64,000 nucleotides of DNA, taken from the IMG/VR virus record IMGVR_UViG_3300018004_000004, positions 124,001-188,000 of that record. The stretch is one strand, 5' to 3'. How positions within the stretch are numbered: the stretch's first letter is position 1; every line of letters begins with the position of its first letter. The notes below the pieces were generated by a model. The model saw nothing but the letters and a program-made list of their open reading frames with translations. It searched no databases and had not been told where the DNA came from. The translations under genes and the position numbers were made by a program. This document shows, one piece after another, positions 1,213 to 55,386 of this stretch.

Positions 1213-1224
1213 CTGATTAGTATA
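1213..1224 (-). promoter_or_regulatory. Conserved 12-mer TATACTAATCAG (candidate phage promoter), copy 1
   Basis: Exact match, intergenic, 20 nt upstream of ATG 1193. Confidence 0.6.
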
Positions 1225-1240
1225 GTAGAATCAAGGACCT

Positions 1241-1876
1241 TTAAACAGTGACCTTCTCACAGCCTAGCTCAAAGAACTCTATGCGGCCGTTGTCTCCGTG
1301 GTGTGCTGTAAGGGTACGTATCCGCCATTCCTCAGTCCTAATCATGGCCGGATCCATCTGCCCATCCGGACCGACTTTAAGCTCGAAAAGCTTATCAGGC
1401 GCCGGGCGGGTAGGAATCGAGTAGCGTTCATAGTCCGGGACGTCGTACCAGAACATGAACGCCAGGCATCTATCGGAGTCCTGGACGCCTATAGGAGAGA
1501 TCTGACCATGCTGCTGAATCTGAGTGGCGCTGCCCAAAACCGAGCCAAAGTTCTTGGCGAAATAGACTGTCTTGATCTCCTCGGTAAAAAGGTAACCCTC
1601 ACCATTGCAGTAGACACAGTTAGGGTCCGGAGAACCATTCTGAACACCAAAAGATAGATAGCACTGGCACTTAGTGTTAGAGAGCTTGCGATAGATCGCC
1701 GGCCGGCCAACACCAGGATCCTCAAAATCACCATTCATAGTACGCGCGAACCACTCACGAAGATCGAATGCAGTCATCTCCGGATAGGCAGTATCCTCGA
1801 ATGAGCCCGAGACGGGTCTATTAGGATTCTGTTGATTGTAGCTCGGCAGACCTTTATTGATGATGATCTGTGACAT
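1241..1876 (-). CDS. Putative neck/head-closure protein with Cys cluster
   Basis: KCQC...DPNCVYCNGEGY motif typical of large-myovirus neck proteins; position in the virion operon. Confidence 0.5.
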   Translation of the reverse strand: MSQIIINKGLPSYNQQNPNRPVSGSFEDTAYPEMTAFDLREWFARTMNGDFEDPGVGRPAIYRKLSNTKCQCYLSFGVQNGSPDPNCVYCNGEGYLFTEEIKTVYFAKNFGSVLGSATQIQQHGQISPIGVQDSDRCLAFMFWYDVPDYERYSIPTRPAPDKLFELKVGPDGQMDPAMIRTEEWRIRTLTAHHGDNGRIEFFELGCEKVTV

Positions 1877-1878
1877 GG

Positions 1879-2625
1879 TTATCCATTGCCTACAAGTGTC
1901 AAGCAAATATCTGCAAGTGTAGTATCCGGTGTGACTGGGCCGTCTATTTCTAGTAGATCAGTAGCAAGAAAAGACGAATCTGAAGCCTGTGTAAACGTCG
2001 CTGTTGTCGCCGACATAGCAAAGTTAGCAGTAGCGAACGGAGCTCCATTCTTACTGAATGTATACGTAGTAGATGCAGTGGCAGCAGCAGACGCAGTACC
2101 TAAAGAAGCAGTAGCACCAGCGGGGAAATCTATCGGAATACCAAGCGGTCCGCGGAAGAGTTTCTGGCTAGCAGTTCCCAATCCCACAATGAATACAGCA
2201 AGAGGCTTAGCAGTTGGACTAACTGATCCAGTAGGACCTGTCGGTCCTGTTGGACCTGTGGCTCCGGTTGGCCCTGTGGCACCTGTTGGTCCAGTGCCTC
2301 CACTTGCACCACTTGCACCTGTGGCTCCTGTTGCCCCGGTAGCACCTGTGGCACCCGTAGCACCAGTGGCTCCTGTTGCTCCTGAAGCTCCAGATGCTCC
2401 TGAAGCGCCGGTTGCTCCTGTCGCCCCCGTTGCTCCAGTGGGCCCTGTATTACCTGTCGCTCCTGTGGCGCCAGTAGCCCCAGCCGGTCCTGTAGCTCCA
2501 GTAGGCCCAGCTACTGTAGGCACATATCCAGAGACGTTACCACTCATATCCGTCTGCCAAGTGATATTGATCTCGGTAGCTGGATGTGGAGGAGCTGGAG
2601 TTGTGCTATTTAACGTGATCGACAT
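1879..2625 (-). CDS. Collagen-like (G-X-T repeat) virion fibre/whisker protein
   Basis: About 30 GAT/GPT triplets plus a C-terminal globular domain paralogous to that of 28276..29232. Confidence 0.75.
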
Positions 2626-2634
2626 GCTGATTCC

Positions 2635-3126
2635 TTACGTGCTTGTTAGTGGCAGCAACCAGTTTGGAAAGTTGTTATCAACTGCCATCCAGTAGTCATC
2701 TGACATAACCTGTGCATCCACAAGAACCGACTGATTATAGCCTGTGGTTGGAAGGGGAGGAACATACGCCGGAGGATTCACCTTCAGCGCAATAACGATT
2801 GTGTTCACAGGGCCTATCGCTACAATCGTAAAAGGTAGAGCCGCAACGTTGCCGGCCGCATCTGAAGTCAGAATAGGCAGTTGGACTGGAGCATAGACAG
2901 GAGTACCCGGCGTGGATTGATAAGGATCAAGCACACCTTGCCATGTACCATCCGCATTGACACCACTCTGTGCGATTGCATAGAGAGTACCCTGATTACC
3001 GGCCAGCCAATCAGAATACTGATAAACGAAGATCGTGTATGAGGACTGATTGGGTCCAGGAACTAACAGGGCGTTGGGAGTCGGATAGTTCTGGTCGATC
3101 GTGAAGACATCCGATACTTCAGCCAT
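2635..3126 (-). CDS. Hypothetical virion-associated protein
   Basis: 163-aa ORF tightly packed in the structural operon. Confidence 0.55.
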   Translation of the reverse strand: MAEVSDVFTIDQNYPTPNALLVPGPNQSSYTIFVYQYSDWLAGNQGTLYAIAQSGVNADGTWQGVLDPYQSTPGTPVYAPVQLPILTSDAAGNVAALPFTIVAIGPVNTIVIALKVNPPAYVPPLPTTGYNQSVLVDAQVMSDDYWMAVDNNFPNWLLPLTST

Positions 3127-3134
3127 TTACCACC

Positions 3135-10581: not shown

Positions 10582-11946
10582 TTAGTCGGTTGTTGGGAGA
10601 TCCGCCAGGTTTGCAGCGGTTGGATCGATTGCGCCTGCACCAAAGATAGTGACGTTCTCGTAAGTCTGGAAGTTGCCTGCAGACTGCTGAACACCGATAT
10701 CCATGATGGAGCGAGCCGGCAGAACGATTTCGTTCGGACGGAGCTTAACGTTCTTAGCAACACCGATTGCCTGACCTTCGTTCAGGATACCGAAGCCATA
10801 GGACTCTTCGATTCCGATGTTACGCAGATCATACATTGGGTCGTCCCAAGAGTTGACATGAGGATCCTGGTCCACGATCAAGGCGCCAAGGTTCTGGCTA
10901 TTGAAGAGGAGGGTGTCTACGACGCGGTTGACCGGGTCGAAGCTCATGAACGGGCTAACCACGATACGGAACGGCAGGCCCAAGTAGTTGGGCAGTATCG
11001 GCCCAGACTTCTGAGTCTGAGGCAAGCCAGCCGAGGTAGCAGTCTGACCACCAGTCTGAGTACCCTGGGTGTACTGACCAGTCTGACCTTGACCGAATGC
11101 GAGGTTACCGAAGTTGAAGAACGGGTTTGCGAACTCGTTTGGCTTACCAGTGAACTGAGCGAAGAACGAACCACCGCCAGCTTGGATAGCAAACTCGCGC
11201 AACACAGGATCCTTTACCCATTGCAGCCAAGACATCGGGTGAATGAGCATCATGTCAGGGATGAAACCCTGCATGAGGACCTGGGCGTACATGTCGTACA
11301 CGTCGTCAGCGGTGATGGAGCCGTTGAACTGACCCTTCAGGTTACGGCCGGTAGTGATACCCTTGATTGGCTGGACAGTCGACGTTGCCGCACGAGCTGC
11401 CGGGCTGTTATCAAAGATCACCGTGCCGAGGCCGGTAATGAAGTTGAAGATGAACTCTTCCTTGTGACGGGCAAGCGCGTTGCCGGCAAGGCGCATCCAG
11501 TACTGGATCCACGGGTAGGTGGACTGTTCCACGAAGCGCTCGCTAATGCGCAGAGCAAGGCCGTGACGCTTGACTGTCACGCCGAAGGTCTGTGCACCGC
11601 CAACGTTAATGTTGAAGATGGGTAGTGCCATCCCATCGCCGACCTCACGAGCTGTGAGGACGTCGATAGCTGGGAAGACCGTCTGCATACCAGGCACGTA
11701 ATCAACGCGCTGGAGCAGGCTAGTCCCGATCAGCATCGGTTCGATACCTTCTTGAACGAAGGTAGTCAGAACGCGCGGGATAAGGAAGGCTGCGTTCGGG
11801 ATATCCAACGCGTCCTTCATCGAGATTTTCTTGTTCTCGACTGGGTCAAAACCGCCGGTACGGAAGATTGTTTCTACACGCACCAAGTCTGTCTTGACTT
11901 GAGCATCGTTCCAGTCGGGCTGTTCGAGTTTTACGTTCTTGGCCAT
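10582..11946 (-). CDS. Major capsid protein (HK97-like fold inferred)
   Basis: 454 aa; follows protease-scaffold and decoration genes; strong codon bias; ALARHKEEFIF and A.DV..MYAQV....F.PD..L.HP..W pattern. Confidence 0.8.
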   Translation of the reverse strand: MAKNVKLEQPDWNDAQVKTDLVRVETIFRTGGFDPVENKKISMKDALDIPNAAFLIPRVLTTFVQEGIEPMLIGTSLLQRVDYVPGMQTVFPAIDVLTAREVGDGMALPIFNINVGGAQTFGVTVKRHGLALRISERFVEQSTYPWIQYWMRLAGNALARHKEEFIFNFITGLGTVIFDNSPAARAATSTVQPIKGITTGRNLKGQFNGSITADDVYDMYAQVLMQGFIPDMMLIHPMSWLQWVKDPVLREFAIQAGGGSFFAQFTGKPNEFANPFFNFGNLAFGQGQTGQYTQGTQTGGQTATSAGLPQTQKSGPILPNYLGLPFRIVVSPFMSFDPVNRVVDTLLFNSQNLGALIVDQDPHVNSWDDPMYDLRNIGIEESYGFGILNEGQAIGVAKNVKLRPNEIVLPARSIMDIGVQQSAGNFQTYENVTIFGAGAIDPTAANLADLPTTD

Positions 11947-16651: not shown

Positions 16652-18749
16652 GATCGGTGAGTAGAACCGACATTATGTCGGGATCCGTAGTCTGTGCGAC
16701 TCGGTCTTTCGCCAACTGGCGGAAGGTATCTAGCGTCATTCGATCCTGATTAGTATAGTAAATCCCAGCCTCGTCACGTAGGCAAGTCTCGACGTACTTA
16801 TCGATTACGGCGGCTGAAGCCTTACCCCAGCTGGCAGCCGAGAAAGTACCCTCTGCCTTCAGACGGTCTATTTCAGCCACAAGCTTGTCATACAGGAGGC
16901 TTGGATCCATGGATGACCTTGCAGAATGCGGGTCTAGATTGCGTCCATACTGATTTGCCGGGCGATTCTTGTTGGCAACGGACTTAGCTCCTGCACTGGC
17001 CTTGCTGGGGCCTTTCTTACCTCTCTCCCCAGCTGCCTCTGCACCACGGACATACATGGCTTCAATCATACCCTGGTTCTTCAGCGCGATACCCTTCTGC
17101 TGCAAATCCAGGACATGCAAGTTATAGTGAGTCAACTGTGCATCCTTCTTGGTATAAGGAACACGCTGCAGTTCACGACGAGCTTCGTCTTCACTGAGCA
17201 AATGGTTGTTGAACAGCTCGATAACGTGATTCTGCCACTTGATGTGACCATCAACGTCAACGTCTGGGAAGACAAGGTCTACGTCTGCAAGAGCATTCTG
17301 AACAGAGAGGTTAGTTGGATTCTCTTCGAACAGCTCCTTGAATATGAACATCTTGAACTGGCCGCAGAACCAGTTAAGATCGGACTTCACGGAATCCTTC
17401 AAGTTCTGAGAGACGTTCTCGGCTGTAGCGCGGTTGCCGGTATCAGTCTCACCCATATCAATAGGCGATACACCCAGGCCAGTAAAGATACGGGCCTTGT
17501 AATGCTTCATGATCTCGGAAGGATCCGGAGCTTCACCTTTGATACCAACGACGTCTACGGCGACACGTTCGTCAGTGATGAATACACCTTCTTTAGGCAT
17601 ATTCTCAAGCTCTGCCTTGATAAGGTCGACTTCTGTGATCCCGTCAACCAACATGGTAGCGGGTGCATCCTCTGAACCGACCTTAACATGAAACAATGGG
17701 AAAAGGTGGTTAATGAGGAGCATTTCCACATTTTCTTCAAGACGGCGGAGAGCAAAAATATCGTCTCGCACGGATACGGTACGCGGGGTTCCATAGACAT
17801 GTCCTGGCTTGACGTCCCATCTGAAATGGACAACGTCTTCCAATCTGTAGTCCTTATACTTGCGCGCGGAGCCGTAGTAACGGCGCCACTTGATGATCTC
17901 ACCCTTCTGGTTAACGAACGGGAAGATAGAGTGAGGAGGTAGAATCATGTAGGCAGCTACAGGAGTCTTATCATCATTCTTCTCATTTGGTTCGCCGCCG
18001 GAAGCTTCTTCATCACGGATCTTCAGCAAGAAACAGTTCGAGATAATGAGCAAGTTGTAGAGAATGTCCTTGATGAAGTTCTCTGTAGTCATGCCCATCA
18101 TGTAGCCAATCTGATTCATACGGCTATTGACGTACTTAGTAAAGCGTGAGTTCATGCCCTCAATCTTGAAGCCCTGGCGGAACATCAAGGAGTGCTTGCG
18201 CTTTGTGGCCTGCATTAGATACGCTTCGGTATCGATCATTGTGAATGGTTCATACTGATCGTACTCAGGCAGAATCGTACCATAGTGGCCGTAGTAGCTA
18301 TTGAGATAATCCTTCTCTTGTTCGATCTTCTTGCGGATCTTCTTCTCAAGCTGTGGTAGATCTTCGGAACTCGGTGCAGCGTCAAGCAGCTTTATCACAC
18401 GATCAAACGAGGCTCTCTCTTCATCCCTATCTTTCCATGTGAAAGCATCCTTTGACTTAGGCTCAAGTGGAGTGCAGTTACGGAAGAGGTCATACGCACC
18501 GCGGATGCGCTCACCTACAGTCAGCTGATGAATACTGTGCTGACTACGATCGCCAAGACCAAGAATGATAGGATCGAGGTTCTTCTTGCTCTTCTTCATG
18601 TCTACAACAGCGAAGGACTTGCCGTAAACCTGGCCTCTCTTCTTGCGCTCGAGATTGTCGATACGCAGTTGTAGATTGAGAGCCTTCTGCTCTTGCAAAG
18701 TGATGAGAGGCTCCTCAACAGGTTTGGTTATCTTCTTAGCCTTAGGCAT
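16539..18749 (-). CDS. Portal protein
   Basis: 736 aa; DVVHFRWD...YGTPR..SVRDDI.ALRRLE and IFTGLGVSPIDMG..DTGNRATA portal-type motifs; between TerL and protease. Confidence 0.8.
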   Translation of the reverse strand: MPKAKKITKPVEEPLITLQEQKALNLQLRIDNLERKKRGQVYGKSFAVVDMKKSKKNLDPIILGLGDRSQHSIHQLTVGERIRGAYDLFRNCTPLEPKSKDAFTWKDRDEERASFDRVIKLLDAAPSSEDLPQLEKKIRKKIEQEKDYLNSYYGHYGTILPEYDQYEPFTMIDTEAYLMQATKRKHSLMFRQGFKIEGMNSRFTKYVNSRMNQIGYMMGMTTENFIKDILYNLLIISNCFLLKIRDEEASGGEPNEKNDDKTPVAAYMILPPHSIFPFVNQKGEIIKWRRYYGSARKYKDYRLEDVVHFRWDVKPGHVYGTPRTVSVRDDIFALRRLEENVEMLLINHLFPLFHVKVGSEDAPATMLVDGITEVDLIKAELENMPKEGVFITDERVAVDVVGIKGEAPDPSEIMKHYKARIFTGLGVSPIDMGETDTGNRATAENVSQNLKDSVKSDLNWFCGQFKMFIFKELFEENPTNLSVQNALADVDLVFPDVDVDGHIKWQNHVIELFNNHLLSEDEARRELQRVPYTKKDAQLTHYNLHVLDLQQKGIALKNQGMIEAMYVRGAEAAGERGKKGPSKASAGAKSVANKNRPANQYGRNLDPHSARSSMDPSLLYDKLVAEIDRLKAEGTFSAASWGKASAAVIDKYVETCLRDEAGIYYTNQDRMTLDTFRQLAKDRVAQTTDPDIMSVLLTDLVSNYFEETHAEESTESSPDQGPEAEHDERSSASGNE
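16746..16757 (-). promoter_or_regulatory. Conserved 12-mer TATACTAATCAG, copy 2 (inside portal 3' region, upstream of the head operon)
   Basis: Exact match; shares TACTATACTAATCAGG with copy 1. Confidence 0.55.
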
Positions 18750-32276: not shown

Positions 32277-32288
32277 CTGATTAGTATA
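32277..32288 (-). promoter_or_regulatory. Conserved 12-mer TATACTAATCAG, copy 3
   Basis: Exact match, intergenic, 20 nt upstream of ATG 32256. Confidence 0.6.
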
Positions 32289-38118: not shown

Positions 38119-38130
38119 CTGATTAGTATA
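38119..38130 (-). promoter_or_regulatory. Conserved 12-mer TATACTAATCAG, copy 4 (head of the late arm)
   Basis: Exact match in the divergent intergenic region, about 150 nt upstream of the first minus-strand gene. Confidence 0.6.
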
Positions 38131-38358
38131 GATTAATCCCGATCGGCGAGTAGGTGTTGTGATTGGCCGGCGGTTTTGCCGTATCTGGGAGGCCAACATG
38201 CGAGCTGGAATGGCAAAATGGTGCATGACCAGGTGAAGAGAGTGTGAGACTCTTCTCACATTTTGTTTCGAGCCCACCCCGTTCTATCTGAGATCTGGGT
38301 TATCCCTAGTCCCATATAGATCAGGTAGGTGGGTAACTCTAGAACAAGGAGACTTACA

Positions 38359-39947: not shown

Positions 39948-42860
39948 GTGATGAATCAACGTTACCACGTTGTATTCGAAGGAGAGAATAAAGTAACAAC
40001 TCGCCGTCCTTGGAAGGGACGCGGTGTTGAGCTTTATTCCTCCAGCGGTGATCCAGCAAGAGGCATACCAGCGATGTTTGGTTCTCATGAAGTGCGTCAG
40101 TTTCTTGAGAACCTCGGGCCATTCATCGTAGCATCGATGGACAATCCCGCAGTCGCAGCTCAGATCCTTGATGAAGGGTATGTGGTAACAGACCCTGATT
40201 CAGGTGCGAAGAGCAAGTGGTATGTTGGTGGTTATTTCGTCCGCGACGACGGTGCAGTGTATATCATGCTGCCCGAAGTCACAACCGATGCCCAGTTTCG
40301 TTCTAAGCTGGGTTTGCATATTGACCTAAACGATCAGTGGGGCAATAGCTTCAAGGTAGGTAAGTATCTGAAGCGCTTGTTCTCACATCATCGTAAGTTC
40401 ATGCAAGGTGAAGTCGTGAAGGAGCTCGACAATGTCGTGCTCGTACGGCTGAAGAGTGGCAAAGTGATCAGTGTGAAATATGCTGATCATGGCGCGCTCA
40501 CAGATGGCATGAACCTCGTGTCAACACATTGCATGAAGCTCATGGGTCTTAACAAGACCATGGGTGCTGGCCTTAGGATCACGGCGTTGAGTCCTAAGGG
40601 ATTCAGCAAAGGCCATGCGATTGTACTGCCGGAGCTGCAGCATGATGTCGTGCTGTTCAACTCTAAGAAGCTGCTGACAGGTGATCAGTTCACCTTCGGC
40701 ATGGATTGGTTGCATAGCGGTGCAGTATTCACTGATATGCAATCAGTCATTAACTTCAGGTTCGCAAACACCAGCTTCTTGTCGCAGTGGGACAAGGAGT
40801 TTCTGGAGACAGTAGTCGATGCTATTGAAGATGAGGATAAGCTGAAGCGTATGCTTCAGTTCTATCATGTGGAGTTCCACAAACAGCGGGACGATGACGG
40901 AGACATGCAGTTCATTCAGAAGGACAAAGAGTGGGCACTGTTGCGTGCATTGCGCGGTGGTGTGAAGATTCAAGATCACCCAGCGCTTGTGCGTAAGGTG
41001 TTCCATCTATTTGCCGACAAGGTTCGCAACTGCGAAACCAACATTCGTGTGCCTATACCTGAGACAGCAGGTGGTGCACGTTATGCTTTGGTTGATCCTA
41101 CCATCTTCGATATGTGGGGTGATCCCACTCTCGAAGGTACTCTGAAGAATGACCAGGTATATTGCGCTGGCGATGTTGGCAGCGTGGTATTCCACAGGCA
41201 GCCGAATGCGCATCGTGACGAGCATTATATCGCGCGCGCAACAAGCAATGAATATCTGAAAGCTATGGACACTGGATGTTTCATGTTCATATCCAAGGAT
41301 ATCATCAAGCCAAGCCTGGCCAAGCTAGGTGGTGGTGATCAGGATGATCGCCTTGTGTATTACAAGGACCCAGCAGTTGTGGAACACTTCAGGCAACTGG
41401 AGCTGGATCCATATCCCACAGTGCCTCTGGTTGAGAAGCCAGAGCCACCAAAGCGTTCCAATGCATTTGCACACAGACTGCATCGCACACCGATCTATGA
41501 TCGGACTCAGCTGCTGATGATGTTGGATCAGATGAAGAACCAGAGTCTGCATATTGGCTTCGTTGTTAATGCTGGTATGCATGACACTGTGCTGACGGAT
41601 AATAGGGCAGAGATCACCAGGAATCTGGAGGCTCTGCCAAAGACACTGAAGAATCAATCTGCCTATGAATGGTTCACAACCAAGTATCAGAACTATACGC
41701 TGCGTGAACCAATGTCCAGGTTGGAGTTGGTCATTGACGCGGTCAAGAAGACTGGTGCTGATCTGGCTGGTATTCGTGACCAGGTGAAGAAGTTCAATGA
41801 CACATTCGAAGTCGTGGCTGAGTTCATGACGCGCGGCGGTAGGTATGATGGGAGAATCCCATTGTCTCGCCGCGGTGACAGCCATCCAGTTATGGTCCGT
41901 ACCATTGTGGATGATAAGCTGGATGAACTCAAGCGACTGAGGCAAGACCTGGAAGATATCATCACTGATATCTCTTGGCAAATGATACCGCCAGTGGCGG
42001 AGGAAATACTGACATGCCCGTGCTATGAAGAGCAGGCGACTCAGCTGGCGTATGCCATGCGTCAGGAGTATCGCAATCAGTGGGCCAATCTGAGTAAGGA
42101 GATTGAGCGCACTGGTGACAAGGCAGAAGTAAAGAAGACCATAGATGCGTACATGAAGATCGACAAGGCGATGTATGAGCGCTTCGCTCCACATCCGCTG
42201 ATCATCGATGCCATGGTCAAGCTGTATATCATGGTGTATGAATCCAGGAAGCCAGAGGCGCCAAGGGACGAAGATGGTCGTCCTATTAAGTTTGGTGATG
42301 GTATCCTCTGGGGCCCGAGAATGTCCGGCCTGACCCTGCGCATGATGGAGCGCGCAGGGCTGGCTGGGCGGTTCACTGAGATCACATTCGAGGATGAAGT
42401 CAAACACCTCCGTAAGGAGAGCCTCGATGTGGTTATTGATCAGGGTATTGTACGCCAGGAGGGTACCAATATCTTGGTGGGTACCATTGACCCAATGGCC
42501 GATGGTGCTAAGAAGGCAGAGAAAGGATGGGTGAAGGTGGCAGCAAGGGATGCATATCCCTATGAACCAGAACCCAGGTACATGATCCTGCGAGTAGTTA
42601 ATGGCATGCATGCCAAGGGTGCGTCTCCAGTTGAGATCGCACAGTGGCGTGATCATGCTAACGAACAGGTCGAACTAGTTCCTTTCATCTGGACGAACCC
42701 GGAGAATGAAGAAGAACACGCAGTTCGCGTGGTGCTCAATGGCCAGGATTATGGCTATATCGATCGCAAGGACAACACGTATGTCACTGAAAAGACTATG
42801 GGTTGGCTATTGCCGGGCACAACACCAAAGACCATGGGAGTATTGGTCTATGAAAGGTAG
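39948..42860 (+). CDS. Putative single-subunit two-barrel RNA polymerase (YonO/cellular RdRP-like)
   Basis: 970 aa; ordered motifs LTDGMNLVS, LRI...KGFSKG, FHRQPN, LGGGDQDDR, matching the TDG..IS, R...KG, R.P and GG.D.DGD motifs of QDE-1-type RdRP/YonO. Confidence 0.7.
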   Translation: MMNQRYHVVFEGENKVTTRRPWKGRGVELYSSSGDPARGIPAMFGSHEVRQFLENLGPFIVASMDNPAVAAQILDEGYVVTDPDSGAKSKWYVGGYFVRDDGAVYIMLPEVTTDAQFRSKLGLHIDLNDQWGNSFKVGKYLKRLFSHHRKFMQGEVVKELDNVVLVRLKSGKVISVKYADHGALTDGMNLVSTHCMKLMGLNKTMGAGLRITALSPKGFSKGHAIVLPELQHDVVLFNSKKLLTGDQFTFGMDWLHSGAVFTDMQSVINFRFANTSFLSQWDKEFLETVVDAIEDEDKLKRMLQFYHVEFHKQRDDDGDMQFIQKDKEWALLRALRGGVKIQDHPALVRKVFHLFADKVRNCETNIRVPIPETAGGARYALVDPTIFDMWGDPTLEGTLKNDQVYCAGDVGSVVFHRQPNAHRDEHYIARATSNEYLKAMDTGCFMFISKDIIKPSLAKLGGGDQDDRLVYYKDPAVVEHFRQLELDPYPTVPLVEKPEPPKRSNAFAHRLHRTPIYDRTQLLMMLDQMKNQSLHIGFVVNAGMHDTVLTDNRAEITRNLEALPKTLKNQSAYEWFTTKYQNYTLREPMSRLELVIDAVKKTGADLAGIRDQVKKFNDTFEVVAEFMTRGGRYDGRIPLSRRGDSHPVMVRTIVDDKLDELKRLRQDLEDIITDISWQMIPPVAEEILTCPCYEEQATQLAYAMRQEYRNQWANLSKEIERTGDKAEVKKTIDAYMKIDKAMYERFAPHPLIIDAMVKLYIMVYESRKPEAPRDEDGRPIKFGDGILWGPRMSGLTLRMMERAGLAGRFTEITFEDEVKHLRKESLDVVIDQGIVRQEGTNILVGTIDPMADGAKKAEKGWVKVAARDAYPYEPEPRYMILRVVNGMHAKGASPVEIAQWRDHANEQVELVPFIWTNPENEEEHAVRVVLNGQDYGYIDRKDNTYVTEKTMGWLLPGTTPKTMGVLVYER

Positions 42861-44873: not shown

Positions 44874-45243
44874 GCTGAGCAAGAAGATGCCGCAACATCC
44901 AGGTGTTACCATCCTCAAGAGCATTGCTCATGAGTTCAAATGCCCTGCAATGAAAGCATTAGAGGATCTCACTCCCTCAGGTTCTGAGTTCGTGAACGAT
45001 CCTACTTTCTGTCATGCCTATCTTCGTAGGCGACTGACCACAGCTTGGGAGTTGCTCAAGCAAAAGACCATTCACCTGCATAATATGCAGAAGCAGATTG
45101 ACCTCCTCGAACAAATAATCAAGGAAACTACTAAGTTTGCCCCAACTGAAATGGCGCCACGCACTTGCAAATACACCGACTGTGGCAAGATCACCACACG
45201 CACAGCCTTTGGCCTATGCACAGAATGTGGGAGGTTCCAATGA
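44851..45243 (+). CDS. Hypothetical protein with C-terminal zinc ribbon
   Basis: CKYTDC...CTEC. Confidence 0.55.
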   Translation: MCVLCARELSKKMPQHPGVTILKSIAHEFKCPAMKALEDLTPSGSEFVNDPTFCHAYLRRRLTTAWELLKQKTIHLHNMQKQIDLLEQIIKETTKFAPTEMAPRTCKYTDCGKITTRTAFGLCTECGRFQ

Positions 45244-45458
45244 GTGTGTACAAACTGTGTCCCAGTTGCAAAGAAGTGCACGACTGGTCTGTCCCCTGCA
45301 AAGCCATGGCAAAGGCTGAGCAGGATGCAATAGACCATGGCCAGATCTGTGCTGTTCTATTTGCTACCAGCGCAGAGATCGATGGTGTTGATCATGGCCA
45401 TCGTGTTGGCCCATGTCCAAACCTGTCGCAGTATGACGGAGATCGGAGTGATTTATGA
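45240..45458 (+). CDS. Small Cys-rich protein
   Basis: CPSC...C; overlapping stop/start. Confidence 0.5.
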   Translation: MSVYKLCPSCKEVHDWSVPCKAMAKAEQDAIDHGQICAVLFATSAEIDGVDHGHRVGPCPNLSQYDGDRSDL

Positions 45459-45754
45459 CCGTTCAGGTCATTGCATCAAAGAAAGGCATTGAGATTGGCA
45501 TAGCCGAGACCACAGTGAATGAGTATCAAGAACCACTGTCTACCTGGTCCGGCCGGCCAGTCAAAGAGCTCACGAATGATGAGCTCCAGCTGTTGTGGTT
45601 CAAGCTCGACAAGTATTTGGATACTCAGATACTTACCGAGATCTACGTCGAGATGAATATGCGTGGAATACCGCGCATTCAATGCACCAACTGCCGCTGG
45701 CCTTTAGTAACAGACCATGATGGCACTTGCTCGCATTGTGGCATCTTGCAATAG
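45455..45754 (+). CDS. Hypothetical protein with zinc ribbon
   Basis: CTNC...CSHC. Confidence 0.55.
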   Translation: MTVQVIASKKGIEIGIAETTVNEYQEPLSTWSGRPVKELTNDELQLLWFKLDKYLDTQILTEIYVEMNMRGIPRIQCTNCRWPLVTDHDGTCSHCGILQ

Positions 45755-45762
45755 GAGAGCAC

Positions 45763-45858
45763 ATGATATATACGATCGTAGGTGTGCTCTTGATGTTTGT
45801 CTTCAGCCTCGTCACTCCCAGGAAAGGAGGACCCAATGATTTCATGGGTCGCAAGTAA
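45763..45858 (+). CDS. Small membrane peptide (31 aa)
   Basis: MIYTIVGVLLMFVFSLVTPRKGG...; RBS AGGAGA. Confidence 0.45.
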   Translation: MIYTIVGVLLMFVFSLVTPRKGGPNDFMGRK

Positions 45859-46162
45859 GCTACTCGCTACGTTGTTCCCGCCCAAAGCCAAGAAGATCAA
45901 GAAGATACATGGCCTTGATACTTGGCTGCTCTTCAGAGCACTTGAGGACGGACATCTTCAGCCAGAGCCAACAGGGTTAGTGTTGGCTAATGGCACACAG
46001 ATCCCCGATGATTCGGGGTGCGGCCGCGTGTTCGAGTATCGACAGGGTTGGTTCAAGAAACCAACCATCATCAAGGATCACAGAGGTGAACACCGTGTAT
46101 CTCACAGGCAAAATGAACGGGATAACATTCAACGTTCAGATCTTACCTACGGGCAGGCGTGA
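45836..46162 (+). CDS. Hypothetical protein
   Basis: RBS AAGGAGG, 108 aa. Confidence 0.5.
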   Translation: MISWVASKLLATLFPPKAKKIKKIHGLDTWLLFRALEDGHLQPEPTGLVLANGTQIPDDSGCGRVFEYRQGWFKKPTIIKDHRGEHRVSHRQNERDNIQRSDLTYGQA

Positions 46163-46304
46163 TCAGGAAGCCAAGGCTGAGGATATTAAGCCTTATCCTG
46201 GCGCCGCGACCTTCAATGAAAACCATCCTGTCTCTGCTGATCCAGAGGATGTGAAGCAGAGCATTCCCAGGAAACAAGTGCATCGTGTCAAAAGAAAGAG
46301 GTGA
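46086..46304 (+). CDS. Hypothetical protein
   Basis: GTG start; overlaps the previous gene. Confidence 0.35.
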   Translation: MNTVYLTGKMNGITFNVQILPTGRRDQEAKAEDIKPYPGAATFNENHPVSADPEDVKQSIPRKQVHRVKRKR

Positions 46305-46308
46305 GCTC

Positions 46309-46674
46309 ATGCAGTTCATCAAGACCTGGATTCTCAGGTATAAGCTCGCGCGCATTTTCAAGCGCGCTGAGCAAGCTGTTGATCTCGGCCGTCAGCCGGG
46401 AGATGAGGTGTTTGTTCAGCTGTATGAACAGGCACTGAAGCTGGCATTGTGGCATCATGCCCAGTTCAAAGACTTCGTCATTGCAGCCGAGGTGCCGGCC
46501 CTGGCCGACTTGGAAAAACTAACGATCAAGCCGGTGCCAGTAGACAATACCCAGAAAGCAAAGCTGGCAGTTCTTATTGCTGCGGCTTTGCCTGTGGTGC
46601 TTGGCACTCTGACCGGCATTGGAATCGGAACATGTCATCTTTGGATGCATCTGTTCCGGTTGATCGGAGGCTAG
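46309..46674 (+). CDS. Membrane protein (C-terminal TM)
   Basis: LAVLIAAALPVVLGTLTGIGIG. Confidence 0.55.
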   Translation: MQFIKTWILRYKLARIFKRAEQAVDLGRQPGDEVFVQLYEQALKLALWHHAQFKDFVIAAEVPALADLEKLTIKPVPVDNTQKAKLAVLIAAALPVVLGTLTGIGIGTCHLWMHLFRLIGG

Positions 46675-46675
46675 T

Positions 46676-46996
46676 ATGTTGCTGCCTGCTGGCGTTGCAG
46701 TAGTCATAATACTGGCCATCCGTAACTTCTGGCGTAACAACTTCTCTCAGGCTCCCAAGTATGTGAAGCAGAGAGAAGAGGACGCCAAGCGCTTGGCTGA
46801 TCCTGCCAACAAGCTGCCTACCTTCAAGGAGGCAGCAGACACGATTGTGAAGACATACAAGGCGCCTGAATCTGAGCGCATACAGTGGCGCCAAGAGTGG
46901 GCACAGAAGCAAACAAGCCTTGAGAACAAGGCTGTTGCCTTGGCATTCGGTATTCTGATTGCCATGCTTGCTATAGGCGCGCTGCTGGCCCATTAG
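46676..46996 (+). CDS. Membrane protein (N- and C-terminal TM)
   Basis: Two hydrophobic helices. Confidence 0.55.
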   Translation: MLLPAGVAVVIILAIRNFWRNNFSQAPKYVKQREEDAKRLADPANKLPTFKEAADTIVKTYKAPESERIQWRQEWAQKQTSLENKAVALAFGILIAMLAIGALLAH

Positions 46997-47007
46997 AAAG
47001 GAGGCCT

Positions 47008-47385
47008 ATGATCATTGAGATCCTAGCAGTTGTTGGCTATGAAGTAGTCACAACTGCAGCTGCGATGCTGGGCCTCAAAGCTTTATCTGGCAACAATATA
47101 CAACGCCAGATGCTTGGCCTCAAACAACCAAAGAGATTGCCCGTTGTTGATGGCTATCTCAAGCGTCAGCTTGGTGGGACCACCAAGATGGAAGAAAGAC
47201 TGTCTCGAAAGGCAGTCAAGGTCATCAATCATATCAGCCAGTATCAGGCATTCCGAATGCTCCTGATCATGGCAGGGAGGAAGATCCGTGAGGCACAAGC
47301 TAACGTGGAAACACGTCCTCGTGGTAGCCGCGGCGATTTTGGTGCCTGGAGCGCTCACAGCTACAGGCGCTTACTTGGCCTATAA
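47008..47385 (+). CDS. Membrane-anchored basic protein
   Basis: RBS AAGGAGG. Confidence 0.55.
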   Translation: MIIEILAVVGYEVVTTAAAMLGLKALSGNNIQRQMLGLKQPKRLPVVDGYLKRQLGGTTKMEERLSRKAVKVINHISQYQAFRMLLIMAGRKIREAQANVETRPRGSRGDFGAWSAHSYRRLLGL

Positions 47386-47424
47386 GGCCTTCAAGAACAA
47401 ACAGTCCAAAGGAAAGGAGACGTC

Positions 47425-47634
47425 ATGAAGTCTTTGCTTACTTTCATCCTGGCATTCATCGCAACAGTTCTGTCTTGCATGCTTGCCATTCGACTGTGCC
47501 AACTGCAGGATGCTTTCTTGCCTGCTTTCCGCGTGCGCCGGCAGATTCATGGAATGAGAGCCGGTCGACTCGCAGCTGACACAGAAGCAAAGCTACGCGC
47601 TATATTCATCAACAAGCCCAAGCGCGTGGCGTAG
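47425..47634 (+). CDS. Small membrane-anchored protein
   Basis: RBS AAGGAG; N-terminal TM. Confidence 0.55.
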   Translation: MKSLLTFILAFIATVLSCMLAIRLCQLQDAFLPAFRVRRQIHGMRAGRLAADTEAKLRAIFINKPKRVA

Positions 47635-47660
47635 TACAAATCTGCATTCGAAAGGACAAC

Positions 47661-47891
47661 ATGAGTACCATCAATCGCATCGTGCTCGGAGTAGCTGGCC
47701 TGATCTGCCTGATCATGGGTGTCTACTCCTGTGTCGCGATCACGAAGGGAGACAATCAGTGGCTCAAACATTCACTCCAACAGCTGCATCCGCTGCAGCT
47801 GCTGGGTTCGGTTTTTGGGCGTTGGTCTGGGGCATTGCGCTCAAGCTGGACACGATCGCAGGCCTCTTCGGCTTCAGGGACCGTGGTCTAA
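47661..47891 (+). CDS. Small membrane-anchored protein
   Basis: RBS AAGGA; N-terminal TM; overlaps the next gene. Confidence 0.45.
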   Translation: MSTINRIVLGVAGLICLIMGVYSCVAITKGDNQWLKHSLQQLHPLQLLGSVFGRWSGALRSSWTRSQASSASGTVV

Positions 47892-48112
47892 GCCGGCGCA
47901 TTCGCCTCTGGATCAACGAGAACAAGGGATTGAGCCTGTGCATTACTGAGGTCACCAACTTCAGTATCCATGGGATTACCAATCCCGATGCCGTCACATT
48001 TGCCATTGGCGGCACTCTATTCAACTTCTTGTTCGTGTTCGTATTCAATCCAATCATGCTCATGATTGAGGGCAAGAAACGACCGATCAAGAATAACAGG
48101 GTGGCTGCGTAG
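47759..48112 (+). CDS. Multi-pass membrane protein
   Basis: GTG start after GGGAGA; 2-3 TM helices. Confidence 0.55.
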   Translation: MAQTFTPTAASAAAAGFGFWALVWGIALKLDTIAGLFGFRDRGLSRRIRLWINENKGLSLCITEVTNFSIHGITNPDAVTFAIGGTLFNFLFVFVFNPIMLMIEGKKRPIKNNRVAA

Positions 48113-53458: not shown

Positions 53459-53470
53459 GTTTGGAGGCCC

Positions 53471-53713
53471 ATGAGTAACGGATTACAGACCTTCGTGTTC
53501 AACTTCCATATCAGGCAGAACGGAGTTGTAAACACAAAGACGGAGGAGAAGGATTGCATTGACTGGACGGAGGCGCATTTGCATTTTCTTACGCGCTGCC
53601 GTGATCTTGGTATCCGCGGGGAAGGTCTGACTGCCTGTTCCTTCTGCAGGAAGGACAGCCCCGAAGGAGCATGTTGCTTCGGCGGTATGACTATGAAGGA
53701 CACACTCCTATGA
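53471..53713 (+). CDS. Small Cys-rich protein
   Basis: RBS GGAGG; CSFC...CCF. Confidence 0.5.
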   Translation: MSNGLQTFVFNFHIRQNGVVNTKTEEKDCIDWTEAHLHFLTRCRDLGIRGEGLTACSFCRKDSPEGACCFGGMTMKDTLL

Positions 53714-53871
53714 AGATGTTCTGGTGGGTGATCATCTTCACTGAAGATAGGCACGGCCTGATTTGGTTCACCCACGCTGATCTTGAGCTGCACCTGTTCT
53801 GTGGTAAGTGCGGCTTCTGTAATCGACATGGCTGGAGAGCAGACATGTTCGAAACCTTTTGGATGTGGTAA
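53710..53871 (+). CDS. Small hypothetical protein
   Basis: ATGA overlap; CGKCGFC. Confidence 0.4.
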   Translation: MKMFWWVIIFTEDRHGLIWFTHADLELHLFCGKCGFCNRHGWRADMFETFWMW

Positions 53872-54056
53872 GGAGGACGATGATCCAAACGCTTAAGAAG
53901 TACTGGAGATGGTACCTAGTATCAGGACTGTCATTCGTAGCAGGGCTGTTCGTTGGGATAACCCTTGCCGTGTATGTCCTGATCAACGCTTTCCACTGAG
54001 TTTCTAGGCTGAATAAGCCTGGAATGTAGTCAAATCCCCAACTGAAAAGGCAACTA

Positions 54057-55295
54057 ATGAGAAAAGCAGTTCTCCTGATTGCTGCCTTGATGTTTGTTGT
54101 TGCACCCGCCGTGTCAGCATGCGACACGGCGTGTAAGACTGGGTATCACTGGGTTTGGACCAACCAGGCTAAGGACCAAGGTTCTTGCCAGCCGGATCCG
54201 ACTCCCACGCCGACACCCAGCACCAACACAAACACGAACAGCAACAGCAATAGCAACGCGAACAGCAACTCGAATACCAACAAGCAGTCGCAAGGCCAAG
54301 GCCAGGGCCAGACGCAGGGACAAGGCCAAGGACAGCAACAGACTGCTACTGGTGGCGCCGGTGGTCAAGGCGGCCAGGGAGGAGCAGGTGGTAATGGATA
54401 CGGTGGGTCAGTTTCTGGTTCTGGGAACTCTCACAATACTAATACCAACACTGCTACCACTGGCCCTTCAACGGCTACTGCTACTAGTGGTGATTCGAAT
54501 GCTACTTCCACGTCCGCGGCCAGTAACAATGGCAACGGATCCAACAATGCAAGTTACTCCAGTACGGAGAACGTGCAGGCTTCGAAGATCCCGGTGGCCA
54601 CAGCTTATGCTGGCACTCCGGCTCCGACTGCCCTTTGTGCCTTAGGCTATGGTGGTGGTGTTCAAACCATGGGCTTTGGCATCAGCGGCGGTGGCGCCAG
54701 GATTGATCAGAACTGTGCCATCCTCGAGGCAGCAAGGCAGGGTGCAACGTACGCTGGCAAGTTGGCCTTTTGCAAGCTCTACGTATCAAACAAGAACGTT
54801 AAGAAAGCAGGGTATACTCTCTCTGATTGTCTGGGAGACACCCTCAACGTTCCGCCCCCAGCCCCAGAGCCGAAGGTCTCCGAGGTTGTCCCTCCAACTC
54901 CCACCACCCGAGTCTTGGTGCAGATCGATCCGAACCCTGCACCCAAGATCACTCCTCCTATGGTAACTGATCAGCCGAACATTCCGCCGGCTGTGGTCCA
55001 ACAGGATGAGTCGAAGACACTCGCGCGCGTAGGTACGTTCCATCTGACCACGCAGTATACAGATGGTGCGTGTCCTACGAAGTTCGTGTGTCTCTCCGCG
55101 GCCGCCAAGGCAGTGCTTGATCAAGCCATTGCCAAGGCCAAGGCCAATCCGACCATACAGGTCGTAGTGGAAGGGAACCTGCGCAATGCAGGCGCCAGCG
55201 CTAGATACATGGCGAAGTCAATCGATCGCAGCCGGATCCTAGTTCGATCCGATGACGATTCGACTGATAACGTCGACATCTACGTCTGGCAGTAG
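54057..55295 (+). CDS. Secreted low-complexity protein with Cys-stabilised middle domain and OmpA-like C-terminus
   Basis: Signal peptide; N/T/S and Q/G tracts; C...GGGVQT.GFGISGG...D.NC domain; AKAVLD.......P...V.VEG...SRI tail. Confidence 0.65.
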   Translation: MRKAVLLIAALMFVVAPAVSACDTACKTGYHWVWTNQAKDQGSCQPDPTPTPTPSTNTNTNSNSNSNANSNSNTNKQSQGQGQGQTQGQGQGQQQTATGGAGGQGGQGGAGGNGYGGSVSGSGNSHNTNTNTATTGPSTATATSGDSNATSTSAASNNGNGSNNASYSSTENVQASKIPVATAYAGTPAPTALCALGYGGGVQTMGFGISGGGARIDQNCAILEAARQGATYAGKLAFCKLYVSNKNVKKAGYTLSDCLGDTLNVPPPAPEPKVSEVVPPTPTTRVLVQIDPNPAPKITPPMVTDQPNIPPAVVQQDESKTLARVGTFHLTTQYTDGACPTKFVCLSAAAKAVLDQAIAKAKANPTIQVVVEGNLRNAGASARYMAKSIDRSRILVRSDDDSTDNVDIYVWQ

Positions 55296-55300
55296 CTTGT

Positions 55301-55374
55301 CTGGGCAGGAGTTTAACCGTTCTCCCTGCTCGGCAAAAATAGCTGGGGTAGATGCCGACTAGCTCTACCCCAGT
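55301..55374 (+). terminator. Two tandem hairpins after the 412-aa gene
   Basis: GGGCAGG/CCTGCTC, then AGCTGGGGTAGA/TCTACCCCAGTT. Confidence 0.45.
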
Positions 55375-55386
55375 TATACTAATCAG
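55375..55386 (+). promoter_or_regulatory. Conserved 12-mer TATACTAATCAG, copy 5 (plus strand)
   Basis: Exact match, 29 nt upstream of ATG 55416. Confidence 0.6.

What the first reader, a model, noticed from the sequence alone, without database searches (positions are those of the whole stretch)
1213..55386. Exact 12-mer TATACTAATCAG occurs five times, always upstream of and co-oriented with genes: candidate cognate promoter
Seen: minus-strand copies at 1213-1224 (before tail completion/sheath), 16746-16757 (inside the portal 3' end, before the protease/capsid operon), 32277-32288 (before the EndoVII and ejection cluster) and 38119-38130 (head of the late arm), plus one plus-strand copy at 55375-55386 (before the RlpA/glycosyltransferase cluster). 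Chance expectation for a given 12-mer on both strands of 64 kb is about 0.01. Partial matches: CTTAATCAGG just before TerL (~22841) and CTATAATCAG (~2731). There is a -10-like TATACT but no shared -35. Inference: a late promoter read by the 970-aa RNAP or a phage sigma factor, which would make 55416 onward late-expressed.
Basis: partly seen in the sequence, partly recalled or inferred. Interest (0 to 1): 0.75.

Follow-up and report, generated by a model that had tools for sequence, protein, structure and literature searches.

The report
Phage-specific promoter of a jumbo phage
A 12-base signal repeated exactly 11 times in this 215-kb peat-soil phage genome, always pointing the way the genes run and usually a few bases before a gene, is almost certainly the phage's own promoter, and the most likely reader is an unusual single-chain RNA polymerase that the phage encodes.

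Summary
TATACTAATCAG occurs 5 times in the window (0 expected) and 11 times in the whole 215,395-bp phage genome, plus 2 one-mismatch copies. All 13 are co-oriented with the local genes. Eight end 8-31 nt before a start codon or a tRNA (P about 5e-11). The same element stands at orthologous positions in at least 8 related uncultured phages, as lineage-specific variants that are uniform within each genome (consensus TATACTA-N-Y-CA-N). No -35-like element accompanies it. It is therefore a real, conserved, oriented signal placed like a promoter, with the start site inferred at its 3' edge. It is not strictly late, because copies precede a primase/helicase gene and a tRNA-Gly. The 970-aa ORF really has a two-barrel RNA polymerase fold (QDE-1/RDR2, Z 16-20; Thermus-phage nvRNAPs, Z 15.5). 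In all nine phages examined (this one and eight relatives) its gene is never preceded by the motif. This polymerase is the favoured reader (about 0.55). A conserved phage protein with a sigma-70 region-4 domain, acting with host core polymerase, is the main rival (about 0.25). No transcription start was mapped; one metatranscriptome contig ends 25 nt downstream of a copy. The finding is a new member of a known kind, the phage-specific promoter.

The parts
1213..1224 (-). Motif copy TATACTAATCAG, 19 nt before the ATG of a 229-aa virion structural protein (504-1193), followed by the tail sheath gene just beyond the window start
   Evidence: Orthologous copy in relative G001 (15287) with the same 19-nt gap; downstream protein 63% identical.
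16746..16757 (-). Motif copy inside the 3' end of the portal gene (16539-18749), read in frame as Tyr-Thr-Asn-Gln. It lies upstream of the 894-aa gene (13738-16422) and the major capsid gene (10582-11946).
   Evidence: Orthologous intragenic copy in G001 (40427). An RNA-library contig of a related strain ends at 16721, 25 nt downstream of the motif.
32277..32288 (-). Motif copy 20 nt before the ATG of the endonuclease VII gene (31894-32256) and the cluster that follows
   Evidence: Syntenic copies in L003, L005, L006, L018-L021.
38119..38130 (-). Motif copy at the head of the whole minus (structural) arm, in the divergent intergenic region, 152 nt before the first minus-strand gene (37499-37966)
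   Evidence: A copy stands at the same head-of-arm position in all 7 relatives with this region.
55375..55386 (+). Motif copy 29 nt before a 96-aa gene (55416-55706), which is followed by the RlpA-like DPBB gene (55691-56275)
55343..55373 (+). Strong hairpin (10-bp stem) ending 1 nt before the 55375 copy. It is probably the terminator of the preceding motif-free transcription unit.
   Evidence: -24.6 kcal/mol, z = -5.1. No comparable hairpin at the other copies.
39948..42860 (+). 970-aa single-subunit two-barrel RNA polymerase (QDE-1/RdRP-like fold) and favoured reader of the motif. Its gene lies in the motif-free stretch at the head of the right plus arm.
   Evidence: 9 of 38 family members hit PF05183, best E 1.5e-10; model pLDDT 87.8; Foldseek: RDR2 and QDE-1 at about 1e-16; P74 gp62 and P32 gp64 at about 1e-7; Z 19.9, 15.9, 15.5. 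Invariant HRQPxxHxxE and GGGDxDD.
38193..38281 (+). Conserved 89-nt non-coding block (AACATGCGAG ... covarying hairpin ... TTTCGAGCCC) between the head-of-arm motif and the first plus-strand gene. It is a different element that heads the operon containing the polymerase gene.
   Evidence: No Rfam match. Function unresolved.

Best explanation
TATACTAATCAG is the phage's own promoter, used for middle and late transcription units (structural arm, primase/helicase, a tRNA block, an RlpA-like cluster). Host RNA polymerase first transcribes motif-free early operons, including the one at the head of the right plus arm that encodes a 970-aa single-subunit two-barrel RNA polymerase. That enzyme, alone or with a phage accessory factor, then recognises the 12-bp element and starts RNA synthesis at or within a few bases of its 3' edge. 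The invariant CA at positions 10-11 may be the -1/+1 pair. Shown: the element's existence, strand and position bias, clade-wide conservation with lineage-specific variants, and the polymerase fold. Inferred: that it is a promoter (about 0.9), where transcription starts, and that this polymerase reads it (about 0.55-0.6).
For: (1) There are 11 exact and 2 one-mismatch copies, all co-oriented, and none of ATACTAAT in antisense. (2) Eight copies end 8-31 nt before a start codon or tRNA (P = 5e-11). One copy heads the entire minus arm in a divergent region with no upstream co-directional gene. (3) The signal is not translational. The copy at 66372 ends 8 nt before tRNA-Gly(GCC), and the orthologous tRNA in two relatives has the motif 9 and 6 nt upstream. 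Shine-Dalgarno sequences begin 0-2 nt after the motif at several sites. Together these pin the RNA 5' end to the motif's 3' edge. (4) Positions are conserved. Five of 7 sites in G001 (polymerase 41% identical) are orthologous or syntenic to ours, and the plus-arm sites are conserved in L038 and L039. (5) Variation is concerted. Ours has T at position 9 in 13 of 13 copies. G001 has C in 7 of 7, including an intragenic copy where the serine codon AGT became AGC. The L005/L039 phage has AGT at positions 7-9 (G at position 8) in 4 of 4. The most distant relative, L022 (polymerase about 30% identical), has TATACTAGCCAA twice. (6) The block is sharply bounded, with no -35 element across 34 sites. 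(7) The polymerase fold is established and no second RNAP was found. The motif never precedes the polymerase gene in this phage or in 8 relatives. (8) All-or-none exactness, and use for both replication and structural genes, matches the logic of single-subunit phage RNAPs. Thermus phage P23-45 shows that two-barrel single-subunit phage RNAPs each have a dedicated motif (PMC10770324). (9) RNA-library contigs of a related strain cover the capsid operon up to 25 nt downstream of the portal-internal copy and not beyond.
Against: No transcription start site was mapped. The RNA evidence is one assembled contig end; contigs also break elsewhere, only 79 nt upstream of that end could be inspected, and DNA carry-over cannot be excluded. 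TATACT resembles a sigma-70-type -10 hexamer, with A at position 2 and T at position 6. The clade also conserves a protein with a sigma-70 region-4 domain, more strongly than it conserves the polymerase. The polymerase family has DxDD instead of the canonical DxDGD metal motif, and its nearest solved structures are RNA-dependent enzymes, so DNA-dependent promoter-specific activity is an inference. The only mapped YonO-dependent start region, in SPbeta, has no similar sequence. Co-occurrence cannot separate the two candidate readers, because both genes sit on the same 216-kb and 218-kb contigs.
Confidence: 0.55

Rival explanations
1. The element is a promoter, but it is read by host RNA polymerase core redirected by the phage's 378-aa sigma-like protein (genome 60152-61288). 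TATACT would act as a -10 element and AATCAG as an unusually constrained discriminator, much as T4 gp55 reads TATAAATA without a -35 element.
For: TATACT matches TATAAT at 5 of 6 positions, including A2 and T6 (sequence). The protein has Sigma70_r4 (E 1.2e-6, above the cut-off; 27 of 28 family members), Atlas neighbours are phage sigma-factor clusters (0.95), and its sigma4 domain superposes at Z 8.3, rmsd 1.9 A. It is conserved across the clade at 59-72% identity. The 2026 review notes that many jumbo phages use sigma homologues with host RNAP (PMC13282480).
Against: No family member hits Sigma70_r2 even at E 0.1, and the N-terminal region overlays sigma2 only loosely. Region 4 normally reads a -35 element, and none is conserved. 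The sigma-like gene lies downstream of a motif-driven unit (49719) and ends inside another copy (61270), which creates a bootstrap problem. Invariance of 12 bases at 11 sites is atypical for sigma-dependent promoters. A distant sigma homologue locus (L037, 37% identical) has no such motif at the syntenic primase and sigma positions.
Confidence: 0.25
2. The element acts at the RNA level or during elongation, as a sequence-specific processing site that creates defined 5' ends between genes, or as an ops/nut-like site loading an antiterminator, rather than as a site of initiation.
For: Strict co-orientation and placement just upstream of genes and a tRNA would also fit an RNA cleavage site. Four copies lie inside genes.
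Against: The head-of-arm copy, conserved in every relative with that region, has no co-directional gene upstream. No other dispersed motif exists that could serve as the promoter class for the 88-kb structural arm. There is no associated RNA structure. Exact 12-nt single-strand cleavage specificity has no close precedent (own knowledge).
Confidence: 0.07
3. The element is a strand-polar DNA signal unrelated to transcription (Chi-like, KOPS-like, packaging or replication related), or the remnant of a small repeat or mobile element.
For: Polar DNA motifs also follow replication or transcription arms (own knowledge).
Against: Such signals are not positioned 8-31 nt before start codons (P = 5e-11). 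The flanks of the copies share no similarity, so it is not a dispersed repeat.
Confidence: 0.03

Closest known systems
Promoters of Thermus phage P23-45 two-barrel single-subunit RNAPs (gp96 vRNAP AT-rich motif; gp64 nvRNAP GC-rich motif), PMC10770324
   Same: The phage encodes a single-subunit two-barrel RNAP, and the nvRNAP homologues P32 gp64 and P74 gp62 match our model at Z 15.5. A dedicated conserved motif stands upstream of the phage genes that enzyme transcribes. The polymerase gene itself belongs to an earlier class without that motif.
   Different: The sequence is different. In P23-45 the phage RNAPs serve pre-early, early and some middle genes, and host RNAP makes the late genes. 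Here the motif covers the structural genes. The P23-45 motifs were defined by TSS mapping and ChIP-seq; here nothing is mapped. Our enzyme is closer in size and fold to QDE-1/RDR2 than to gp64.
T7/T3/SP6-type promoters of Pol-I-like single-subunit phage RNAPs
   Same: Near-identical copies are dispersed in one orientation before DNA-metabolism and structural genes. The polymerase gene is early and is made by host RNAP. Related phages carry promoter variants that differ at a few positions (own knowledge).
   Different: The polymerase family is unrelated: no PF00940 match was found, although that control search rang nowhere. The conserved block is 12 bp rather than about 23 bp.
YonO of Bacillus prophage SPbeta and its late promoter P_YonO (PMC5467207)
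   Same: It is a single-chain two-barrel RNAP of a tailed phage that transcribes late genes. Its promoter determinants are unknown, so this motif would be among the first consensus sequences proposed for that broad group. Local motif resemblance exists: HRQPNAHRDEH with LRSPHLFREH, and GGDQDDR with FDNDGDK.
   Different: Profile similarity to YonO is not significant (hhalign probability 0.35%). SPbeta has one mapped start for one long operon, and no TATACTA-like sequence lies near it. YonO keeps DxDGD, whereas our family has DxDD.
T4 late promoters (TATAAATA) read by gp55 with host core RNAP
   Same: It is a short, AT-rich, -10-like element without a -35 element, placed close to late genes (own knowledge).
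   Different: T4's element is 8 bp and tolerates variation, and it depends on gp55, gp33 and the sliding clamp. Here 12 bp are invariant, the element also serves primase and tRNA genes, and no sigma region-2-like protein was detected.
phiKZ and AR9 non-virion multisubunit RNAP promoters
   Same: These are jumbo phages with their own RNAP and short phage-specific promoter motifs near the start site (PMC13282480, PMC9209446).
   Different: Those enzymes are split beta/beta' multisubunit RNAPs with a specificity subunit (gp68, gp226). This phage has a single-chain enzyme and no beta/beta'-like genes were found (one search found no paralogue; dedicated family searches were not run).

Membership tests
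Phage-specific promoter (cognate promoter of a phage-encoded transcription factor or polymerase) | Over-represented sequence, co-oriented with the genes, just upstream of transcription units | tested here: met
   11 exact and 2 near copies; 13 of 13 co-oriented; 8 of 13 lie 5-35 nt before starts (P = 5e-11); one copy heads the structural arm.
Phage-specific promoter (cognate promoter of a phage-encoded transcription factor or polymerase) | Conserved at orthologous positions in related genomes while the flanks diverge, with lineage-specific variants | tested here: met
   34 sites in 9 phages; TATACTA and CA invariant apart from one G at position 1; positions 8, 9 and 12 are lineage-specific and uniform within each genome.
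Phage-specific promoter (cognate promoter of a phage-encoded transcription factor or polymerase) | Primary transcript 5' ends map just downstream of the element | tested here: inconclusive
   Only assembled contigs of metatranscriptomes were available. One contig ends 25 nt downstream of the 16746 copy. No 5'-end-specific data exist.
Two-barrel (DPBB) single-subunit RNA polymerases, QDE-1/RdRP/YonO-like (the 970-aa protein) | Two double-psi beta-barrel fold with full-length similarity to solved members | tested here: met
   Foldseek E 3e-16 to RDR2 and QDE-1. VIA Z 19.9, 15.9 and 15.5 (P32 gp64), and 10.4 (P23-45 gp96). Model pLDDT 87.8. 9 of 38 family members hit PF05183.
Two-barrel (DPBB) single-subunit RNA polymerases, QDE-1/RdRP/YonO-like (the 970-aa protein) | Catalytic aspartate triad DxDxD (DxDGD) | tested here: inconclusive
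   Three invariant Asp residues are present but spaced DxDD (GGGDQDDR; D463, D465, D466), with Arg where the third Asp normally sits. Whether D466 substitutes was not tested.
Two-barrel (DPBB) single-subunit RNA polymerases, QDE-1/RdRP/YonO-like (the 970-aa protein) | DNA-dependent, promoter-specific RNA synthesis | not testable with these tools
   Needs biochemistry.
Sigma-70-type promoter read by a sigma-family factor | -10 hexamer resembling TATAAT with A2 and T6 | tested here: met
   TATACT is invariant apart from one G at position 1.
Sigma-70-type promoter read by a sigma-family factor | -35 element or extended -10 TG at the canonical spacing | tested here: not met
   No conserved position upstream of the 12-mer in 34 sites. 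The base before the motif is mostly C, not TGn.
Sigma-70 family factor (the 378-aa protein) | Region 4 (HTH, -35 and flap binding) | tested here: met
   PF04545 at E 1.2e-6; 27 of 28 members; sigma4 superposition Z 8.3.
Sigma-70 family factor (the 378-aa protein) | Region 2 (core binding, -10 recognition and melting) | tested here: not met
   No PF04542 hit in the genome or in any of 28 family members at E 0.1. Only weak full-length overlays on sigma factors (E >= 0.01, high rmsd). Divergent phage sigmas can escape this test.
T7-like (Pol-I-type) single-subunit RNAP system | PF00940 RNA polymerase gene in the genome | tested here: inconclusive
   No match in six frames at E <= 1, but the control genomes did not ring either. 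No Pfam or PHROG hit of this kind was seen among the proteins scanned.

The most novel reading that the evidence does not exclude
The 12-mer is a minimal, factor-independent promoter recognised directly by a QDE-1/RdRP-clade single-chain two-barrel RNA polymerase with a DxDD active site. It would be the first promoter consensus for that clade in a jumbo phage. The natural specificity variants (T or C at position 9; A, G or T at position 8) would have co-evolved with the enzyme across a whole family of uncultured peat phages, giving a ready-made set of orthogonal polymerase-promoter pairs and a direct handle on how the simplest relatives of cellular RNA polymerases find promoters without sigma.
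Probability: 0.35. Interest if true: 0.75.

Novelty: new member of a known kind. Interest (0 to 1): 0.6.

Why it matters
Promoter recognition by single-chain two-barrel RNA polymerases, the minimal relatives of cellular RNAPs, is almost unknown. For YonO the promoter is explicitly undetermined (PMC5467207), and only the Thermus-phage enzymes have associated motifs (PMC10770324). This work gives a compact 12-bp candidate promoter with 34 natural instances and natural specificity variants, paired with a confidently modelled polymerase and a second candidate factor. That makes the question directly testable in vitro without culturing the phage or its unknown host. It also provides a transcription map (early motif-free regions versus motif-driven units) for an uncultured clade of roughly 215-kb jumbo phages that recurs in peat and wetland metagenomes. 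It further shows a jumbo phage using a single-subunit rather than a multisubunit RNAP, a configuration not covered in the 2026 review of jumbo-phage biology (PMC13282480).

Tried and rejected
(1) Megablast and tblastn of the polymerase, the sigma-like protein and TerL against 50,697 cultured phage records found no close relative. The best TerL match is 30% identical, and neither the polymerase nor the sigma-like protein has any hit.
(2) A sigma-70 consensus promoter scan of window 36000-48000 found 12 matches against 11.7 expected, which is uninformative.
(3) Hairpins or terminators as part of the element were rejected. Only the 55375 copy has a strong upstream hairpin.
(5) Similarity to the SPbeta YonO promoter region was rejected. 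There is no TATACTA there, and a 9-base TACTAATCA match lies about 800 nt from the primer-extension region, so it is not at the start site.
(6) A second, virion RNAP hidden in giant structural proteins was rejected. The polymerase has no paralogue, the three giant proteins have no informative hits, and the 934-aa protein with a DADGD string is a lectin-like virion protein.
(7) Generality in the cultured YonO-like-RNAP jumbo phage 0305phi8-36 was not found. It has no TATACTANNCA and a different dispersed hairpin word.
(8) Separating the two candidate readers by phyletic pattern failed. Both genes co-occur on the same large contigs, the GTDB genomes hold no polymerase relatives, and a distant sigma homologue locus lacks the motif but its polymerase status is unknown.
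(9) The repeated 14-mer in L037 is three local tandem copies in one spacer, which looks operator-like and is not a dispersed promoter.
(10) No Rfam family matches the divergent region.

Full report
OBSERVATION. None of 100 dinucleotide-preserving shuffles of the window gave a single match. The window is bases 124001-188000 of a single 215,395-bp IMG/VR virus record that is rated complete. It has 50.7% G+C, 31 tRNAs and a tmRNA, and it recurs in peat, wetland and soil metagenomes. Genome-wide there are 11 exact copies and two one-mismatch copies (80226- GATACTAATCAG and 113058- TATACTAGTCAG). Two-mismatch matches are at chance level, with 4 co-oriented and 5 anti-oriented. The word is the most over-represented 12-mer in the genome, level with the tRNA T-loop. 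Its core ATACTAAT occurs 16 times in sense and never in antisense, against about 2 expected.

ORIENTATION AND POSITION. A simple gene caller shows three arms: plus to 74.3 kb, minus from 74.5 to 162 kb (structural genes), and plus from 162.3 kb onward. All 13 copies point the way their arm is transcribed (P = 1.2e-4). Eight of them end 8-31 nt before a start codon or a tRNA, where only 2.1% of positions qualify (P = 5e-11). One copy (window 38119) sits in the divergent intergenic region at the head of the whole minus arm. Four copies lie inside long structural genes, all read in frame as TAT-ACT-AAT-CAG (or its one-base variants). The copy at 66372 ends 8 nt before tRNA-Gly(GCC), which excludes a translational signal. 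Several Shine-Dalgarno sequences begin 0-2 nt after the motif. Conservation starts and stops sharply at the 12 bases. There is no -35-like element and no associated hairpin, except a probable terminator just before the 55375 copy.

COMPARATIVE EVIDENCE. The 970-aa protein has about 50 metagenomic homologues, and I fetched DNA around nine of them.
- Every relative with the syntenic region carries the element on the strand of the structural arm: at the head of the arm, and before the same downstream cluster.
- In the 62-kb relative G001 (polymerase 41% identical), TATACTANNCAG occurs 7 times on one strand and 0 on the other.
- Five of those seven G001 sites are orthologous or syntenic to ours. 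They include the copy before the virion-protein/sheath genes (same 19-nt gap), the copy inside the portal 3' end, and an intragenic copy in a giant gene.
- The plus-arm copies are conserved too. In L038 and L039 the motif lies inside the 3' end of the sigma-like gene and 9 and 6 nt before the orthologous tRNA-Gly(GCC).
- The variants are lineage-specific and uniform within a genome. Ours is AAT-CAG. The L005/L039 phage is AGT-CAG in 4 of 4 sites. G001 is AAC-CAG in 6 of 7 sites plus one AGC-CAG. The most distant relative, L022 (polymerase about 30% identical, 57% G+C), has AGC-CAA twice.
- Across 34 sites, TATACTA and the CA at positions 10-11 are invariant apart from a single G at position 1, and positions 8, 9 and 12 vary.
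- In the intragenic copy, the serine codon is AGT in our phage and AGC in G001, following each lineage's own base at position 9.
Concerted change at many dispersed sites is what co-evolution with one trans-acting recognition protein predicts.

WHAT IT IS. These properties are those of a promoter. The tRNA and Shine-Dalgarno distances place the RNA 5' end at or within a few bases of the motif's 3' edge, so the element spans roughly -12 to -1 (or -10 to +2 if the invariant CA is the -1/+1 pair). The start site is inferred, not shown. The motif-driven units include:
- the structural arm, with a virion protein and tail sheath, the portal-to-capsid operon, the baseplate, a tail-fibre-like gene, and an EndoVII cluster;
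- a DnaG-type primase/helicase gene;
- a tRNA block;
- an RlpA-like cluster.
'Late' is therefore too narrow. No exact or one-mismatch copy occurs in genome 1-49.7 kb or in 162.3-179.3 kb, and these stretches are presumably early. The second stretch contains the polymerase and DNA ligase genes.
The only direct RNA evidence is weak. In metatranscriptome X24, contigs of a strain about 93-95% identical cover the capsid operon, and the upstream-most contig ends at window 16721, 25 nt downstream of the portal-internal copy. Nothing is laid on the remaining 79 nt. Contigs also break elsewhere, and DNA carry-over cannot be excluded.

WHO READS IT. There are two candidates.
(a) The 970-aa ORF. It has no Pfam or PHROG hit itself, but 9 of 38 family members hit PF05183 (RdRP), with a best E-value of 1.5e-10. 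A confident model (pLDDT 87.8, pTM 0.76) matches RDR2 and QDE-1 over the full length (Foldseek about 1e-16; Z 19.9 and 15.9). It also matches the Thermus-phage non-virion RNAPs P32 gp64 and P74 gp62 (Z 15.5), and more weakly P23-45 gp96 and crAss phi14:2 gp66. Invariant HRQPxxHxxE and GGGDxDD motifs correspond to the barrel motifs. The metal motif is DxDD rather than DxDGD, whereas YonO has FDNDGDK. The genome has no paralogue and no second RNAP. The polymerase gene heads a motif-free operon in this phage and in 8 relatives. That operon is preceded by a different conserved 89-nt block.
(b) A 378-aa protein (genome 60152-61288). It has a C-terminal sigma-70 region-4 domain (PF04545; sigma4 superposition Z 8.3), a central winged helix, and phage-sigma neighbours in the ESM Atlas. 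It is conserved across the clade, on the same large contigs as the polymerase. No member hits sigma region 2.
I favour (a) for four reasons: all-or-none 12-bp identity; use for both replication and structural genes from an early-expressed polymerase (T7-like logic); absence of a -35 element for a region-4 protein to bind; and the sigma-like gene itself lying within motif-driven units. TATACT is nonetheless -10-like, and a divergent sigma could escape detection. A combined model, with the polymerase using the 378-aa protein as a specificity factor, is also open. Phyletic patterns could not separate the candidates.

COMPARISON WITH THE KNOWN. The closest functional precedent is Thermus phage P23-45, where two single-subunit two-barrel RNAPs each have a dedicated promoter motif defined by TSS mapping and ChIP-seq (PMC10770324). 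For YonO of SPbeta the promoter is explicitly unknown (PMC5467207), and its mapped start region has no TATACTA-like sequence. The logic resembles T7-type systems, but the enzyme is unrelated. The sequence resembles T4's -10-only late promoter, but it is longer, invariant, and not restricted to late genes. The cultured jumbo phage 0305phi8-36, which has a YonO-like RNAP according to PMC7824862, lacks this motif. No paper in the library holds the motif in a phage context. The 2026 jumbo-phage review discusses only multisubunit phage RNAPs and sigma homologues.

VERDICT. The interpretation as a cognate phage promoter is well supported by sequence statistics and comparative genomics (about 0.9), but 'late' should be replaced by 'phage-specific middle/late'. 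The finding is a new member of a known kind. Its value is that it makes promoter recognition by a minimal two-barrel RNA polymerase directly testable.

Noticed in passing
window 38193-38281 (+); also L003 8945-9033, L005 8432-8520, L006 8478-8567, L018 7987-8075, L019 8030-8118, L020 7180-7268, L021 8536-8625: A conserved non-coding block of constant length (89-90 nt) lies in the divergent region between the head-of-arm motif and the first plus-strand gene. It has near-invariant ends AACATG[C/T]GAG and TTTCGAGCCC, and a central hairpin kept by compensatory changes (4-5 pairs changed on both sides). There is no Rfam match. Its spacing to the 12-mer varies from 19 to 101 nt. It could be the early promoter or leader of the operon that encodes the polymerase, a small RNA, or an origin.
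   Followed up: partly
genome 150 and 6376 (+), outside the window; L003 8874, L005 8017, L018 7607, L021 8065 (+): Further copies of AACACG[C/T]GAG occur on the plus strand. The two in our genome are each followed by a terminator-like hairpin and a T run. In our genome the count (3) is not above the composition expectation (1.9), so the significance rests on the relatives only.
   Followed up: partly
window 39948-42860 (+), residues 463-467 and 871-969 of the protein: The polymerase family has an invariant GGGDQDD(R), that is DxDD with Arg where the third Asp of the canonical DxDGD triad sits. Its C-terminal beta-rich domain gives a borderline match to a DNA-binding HIRAN domain (Z 7.3).
   Followed up: partly
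genome 60152-61288 (+), outside the window (locus L035): A 378-aa clade-conserved protein combines a helical N-terminal region, a winged-helix domain (residues 137-216) and a sigma-70 region-4 domain (295-365), with no detectable region 2. One motif copy lies inside its last 19 bases in three phages.
   Followed up: yes
genome 62920 (+), outside the window: TATACTAATATCAGG looks like the motif with a 2-base AT insertion, co-oriented. It may be a decayed or variant copy.
   Followed up: no
window 35690-35745 (both strands): An AT-rich stretch with several TATACTA / TAGTATA words in both orientations (atagtataatagatcttaggtaTATACTAtaggtcatagagtactctatact) sits in a spacer of the minus arm. It does not match the full motif.
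   Followed up: no
genome 63.6-73.5 kb and 189-210 kb, outside the window: The genome carries 31 tRNA genes and a tmRNA (tag AEFEELPLAA). The order of the tRNA block is largely conserved in relatives L038 and L039.
   Followed up: no
window 31894-32256 (-): In our phage an endonuclease VII gene sits between the motif copy and the cluster it precedes. In relatives L003, L006 and L020 a different gene follows the copy directly, and EndoVII lies elsewhere (for example next to the polymerase gene in L020), so it appears to move around.
   Followed up: no
L018 10001-12905: In this relative the polymerase gene is called as two ORFs (645 aa and 331 aa). It may be split or frameshifted, or this may be an assembly error.
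   Followed up: no
Bacillus phage 0305phi8-36 (NC_009760; loci L043-L053), 144-212 kb: There are 19 same-orientation copies of CGTGCGAACG (stem CGT/ACG, loop GCGA, with flanking bases extending the stem). It is the top dispersed word in this cultured jumbo phage, which encodes a YonO-like RNAP. It may be a terminator or a hairpin-type regulatory signal.
   Followed up: no
L037 15792-15873: Three tandem copies of CTGCGATTATACGA lie in one spacer of a distant relative, in an operator-like arrangement.
   Followed up: partly
genome-wide, sense strand: GAGCGCATCC occurs 6 times in sense and once in antisense (0.13 expected). One copy lies just upstream of the 113058 motif variant.
   Followed up: no
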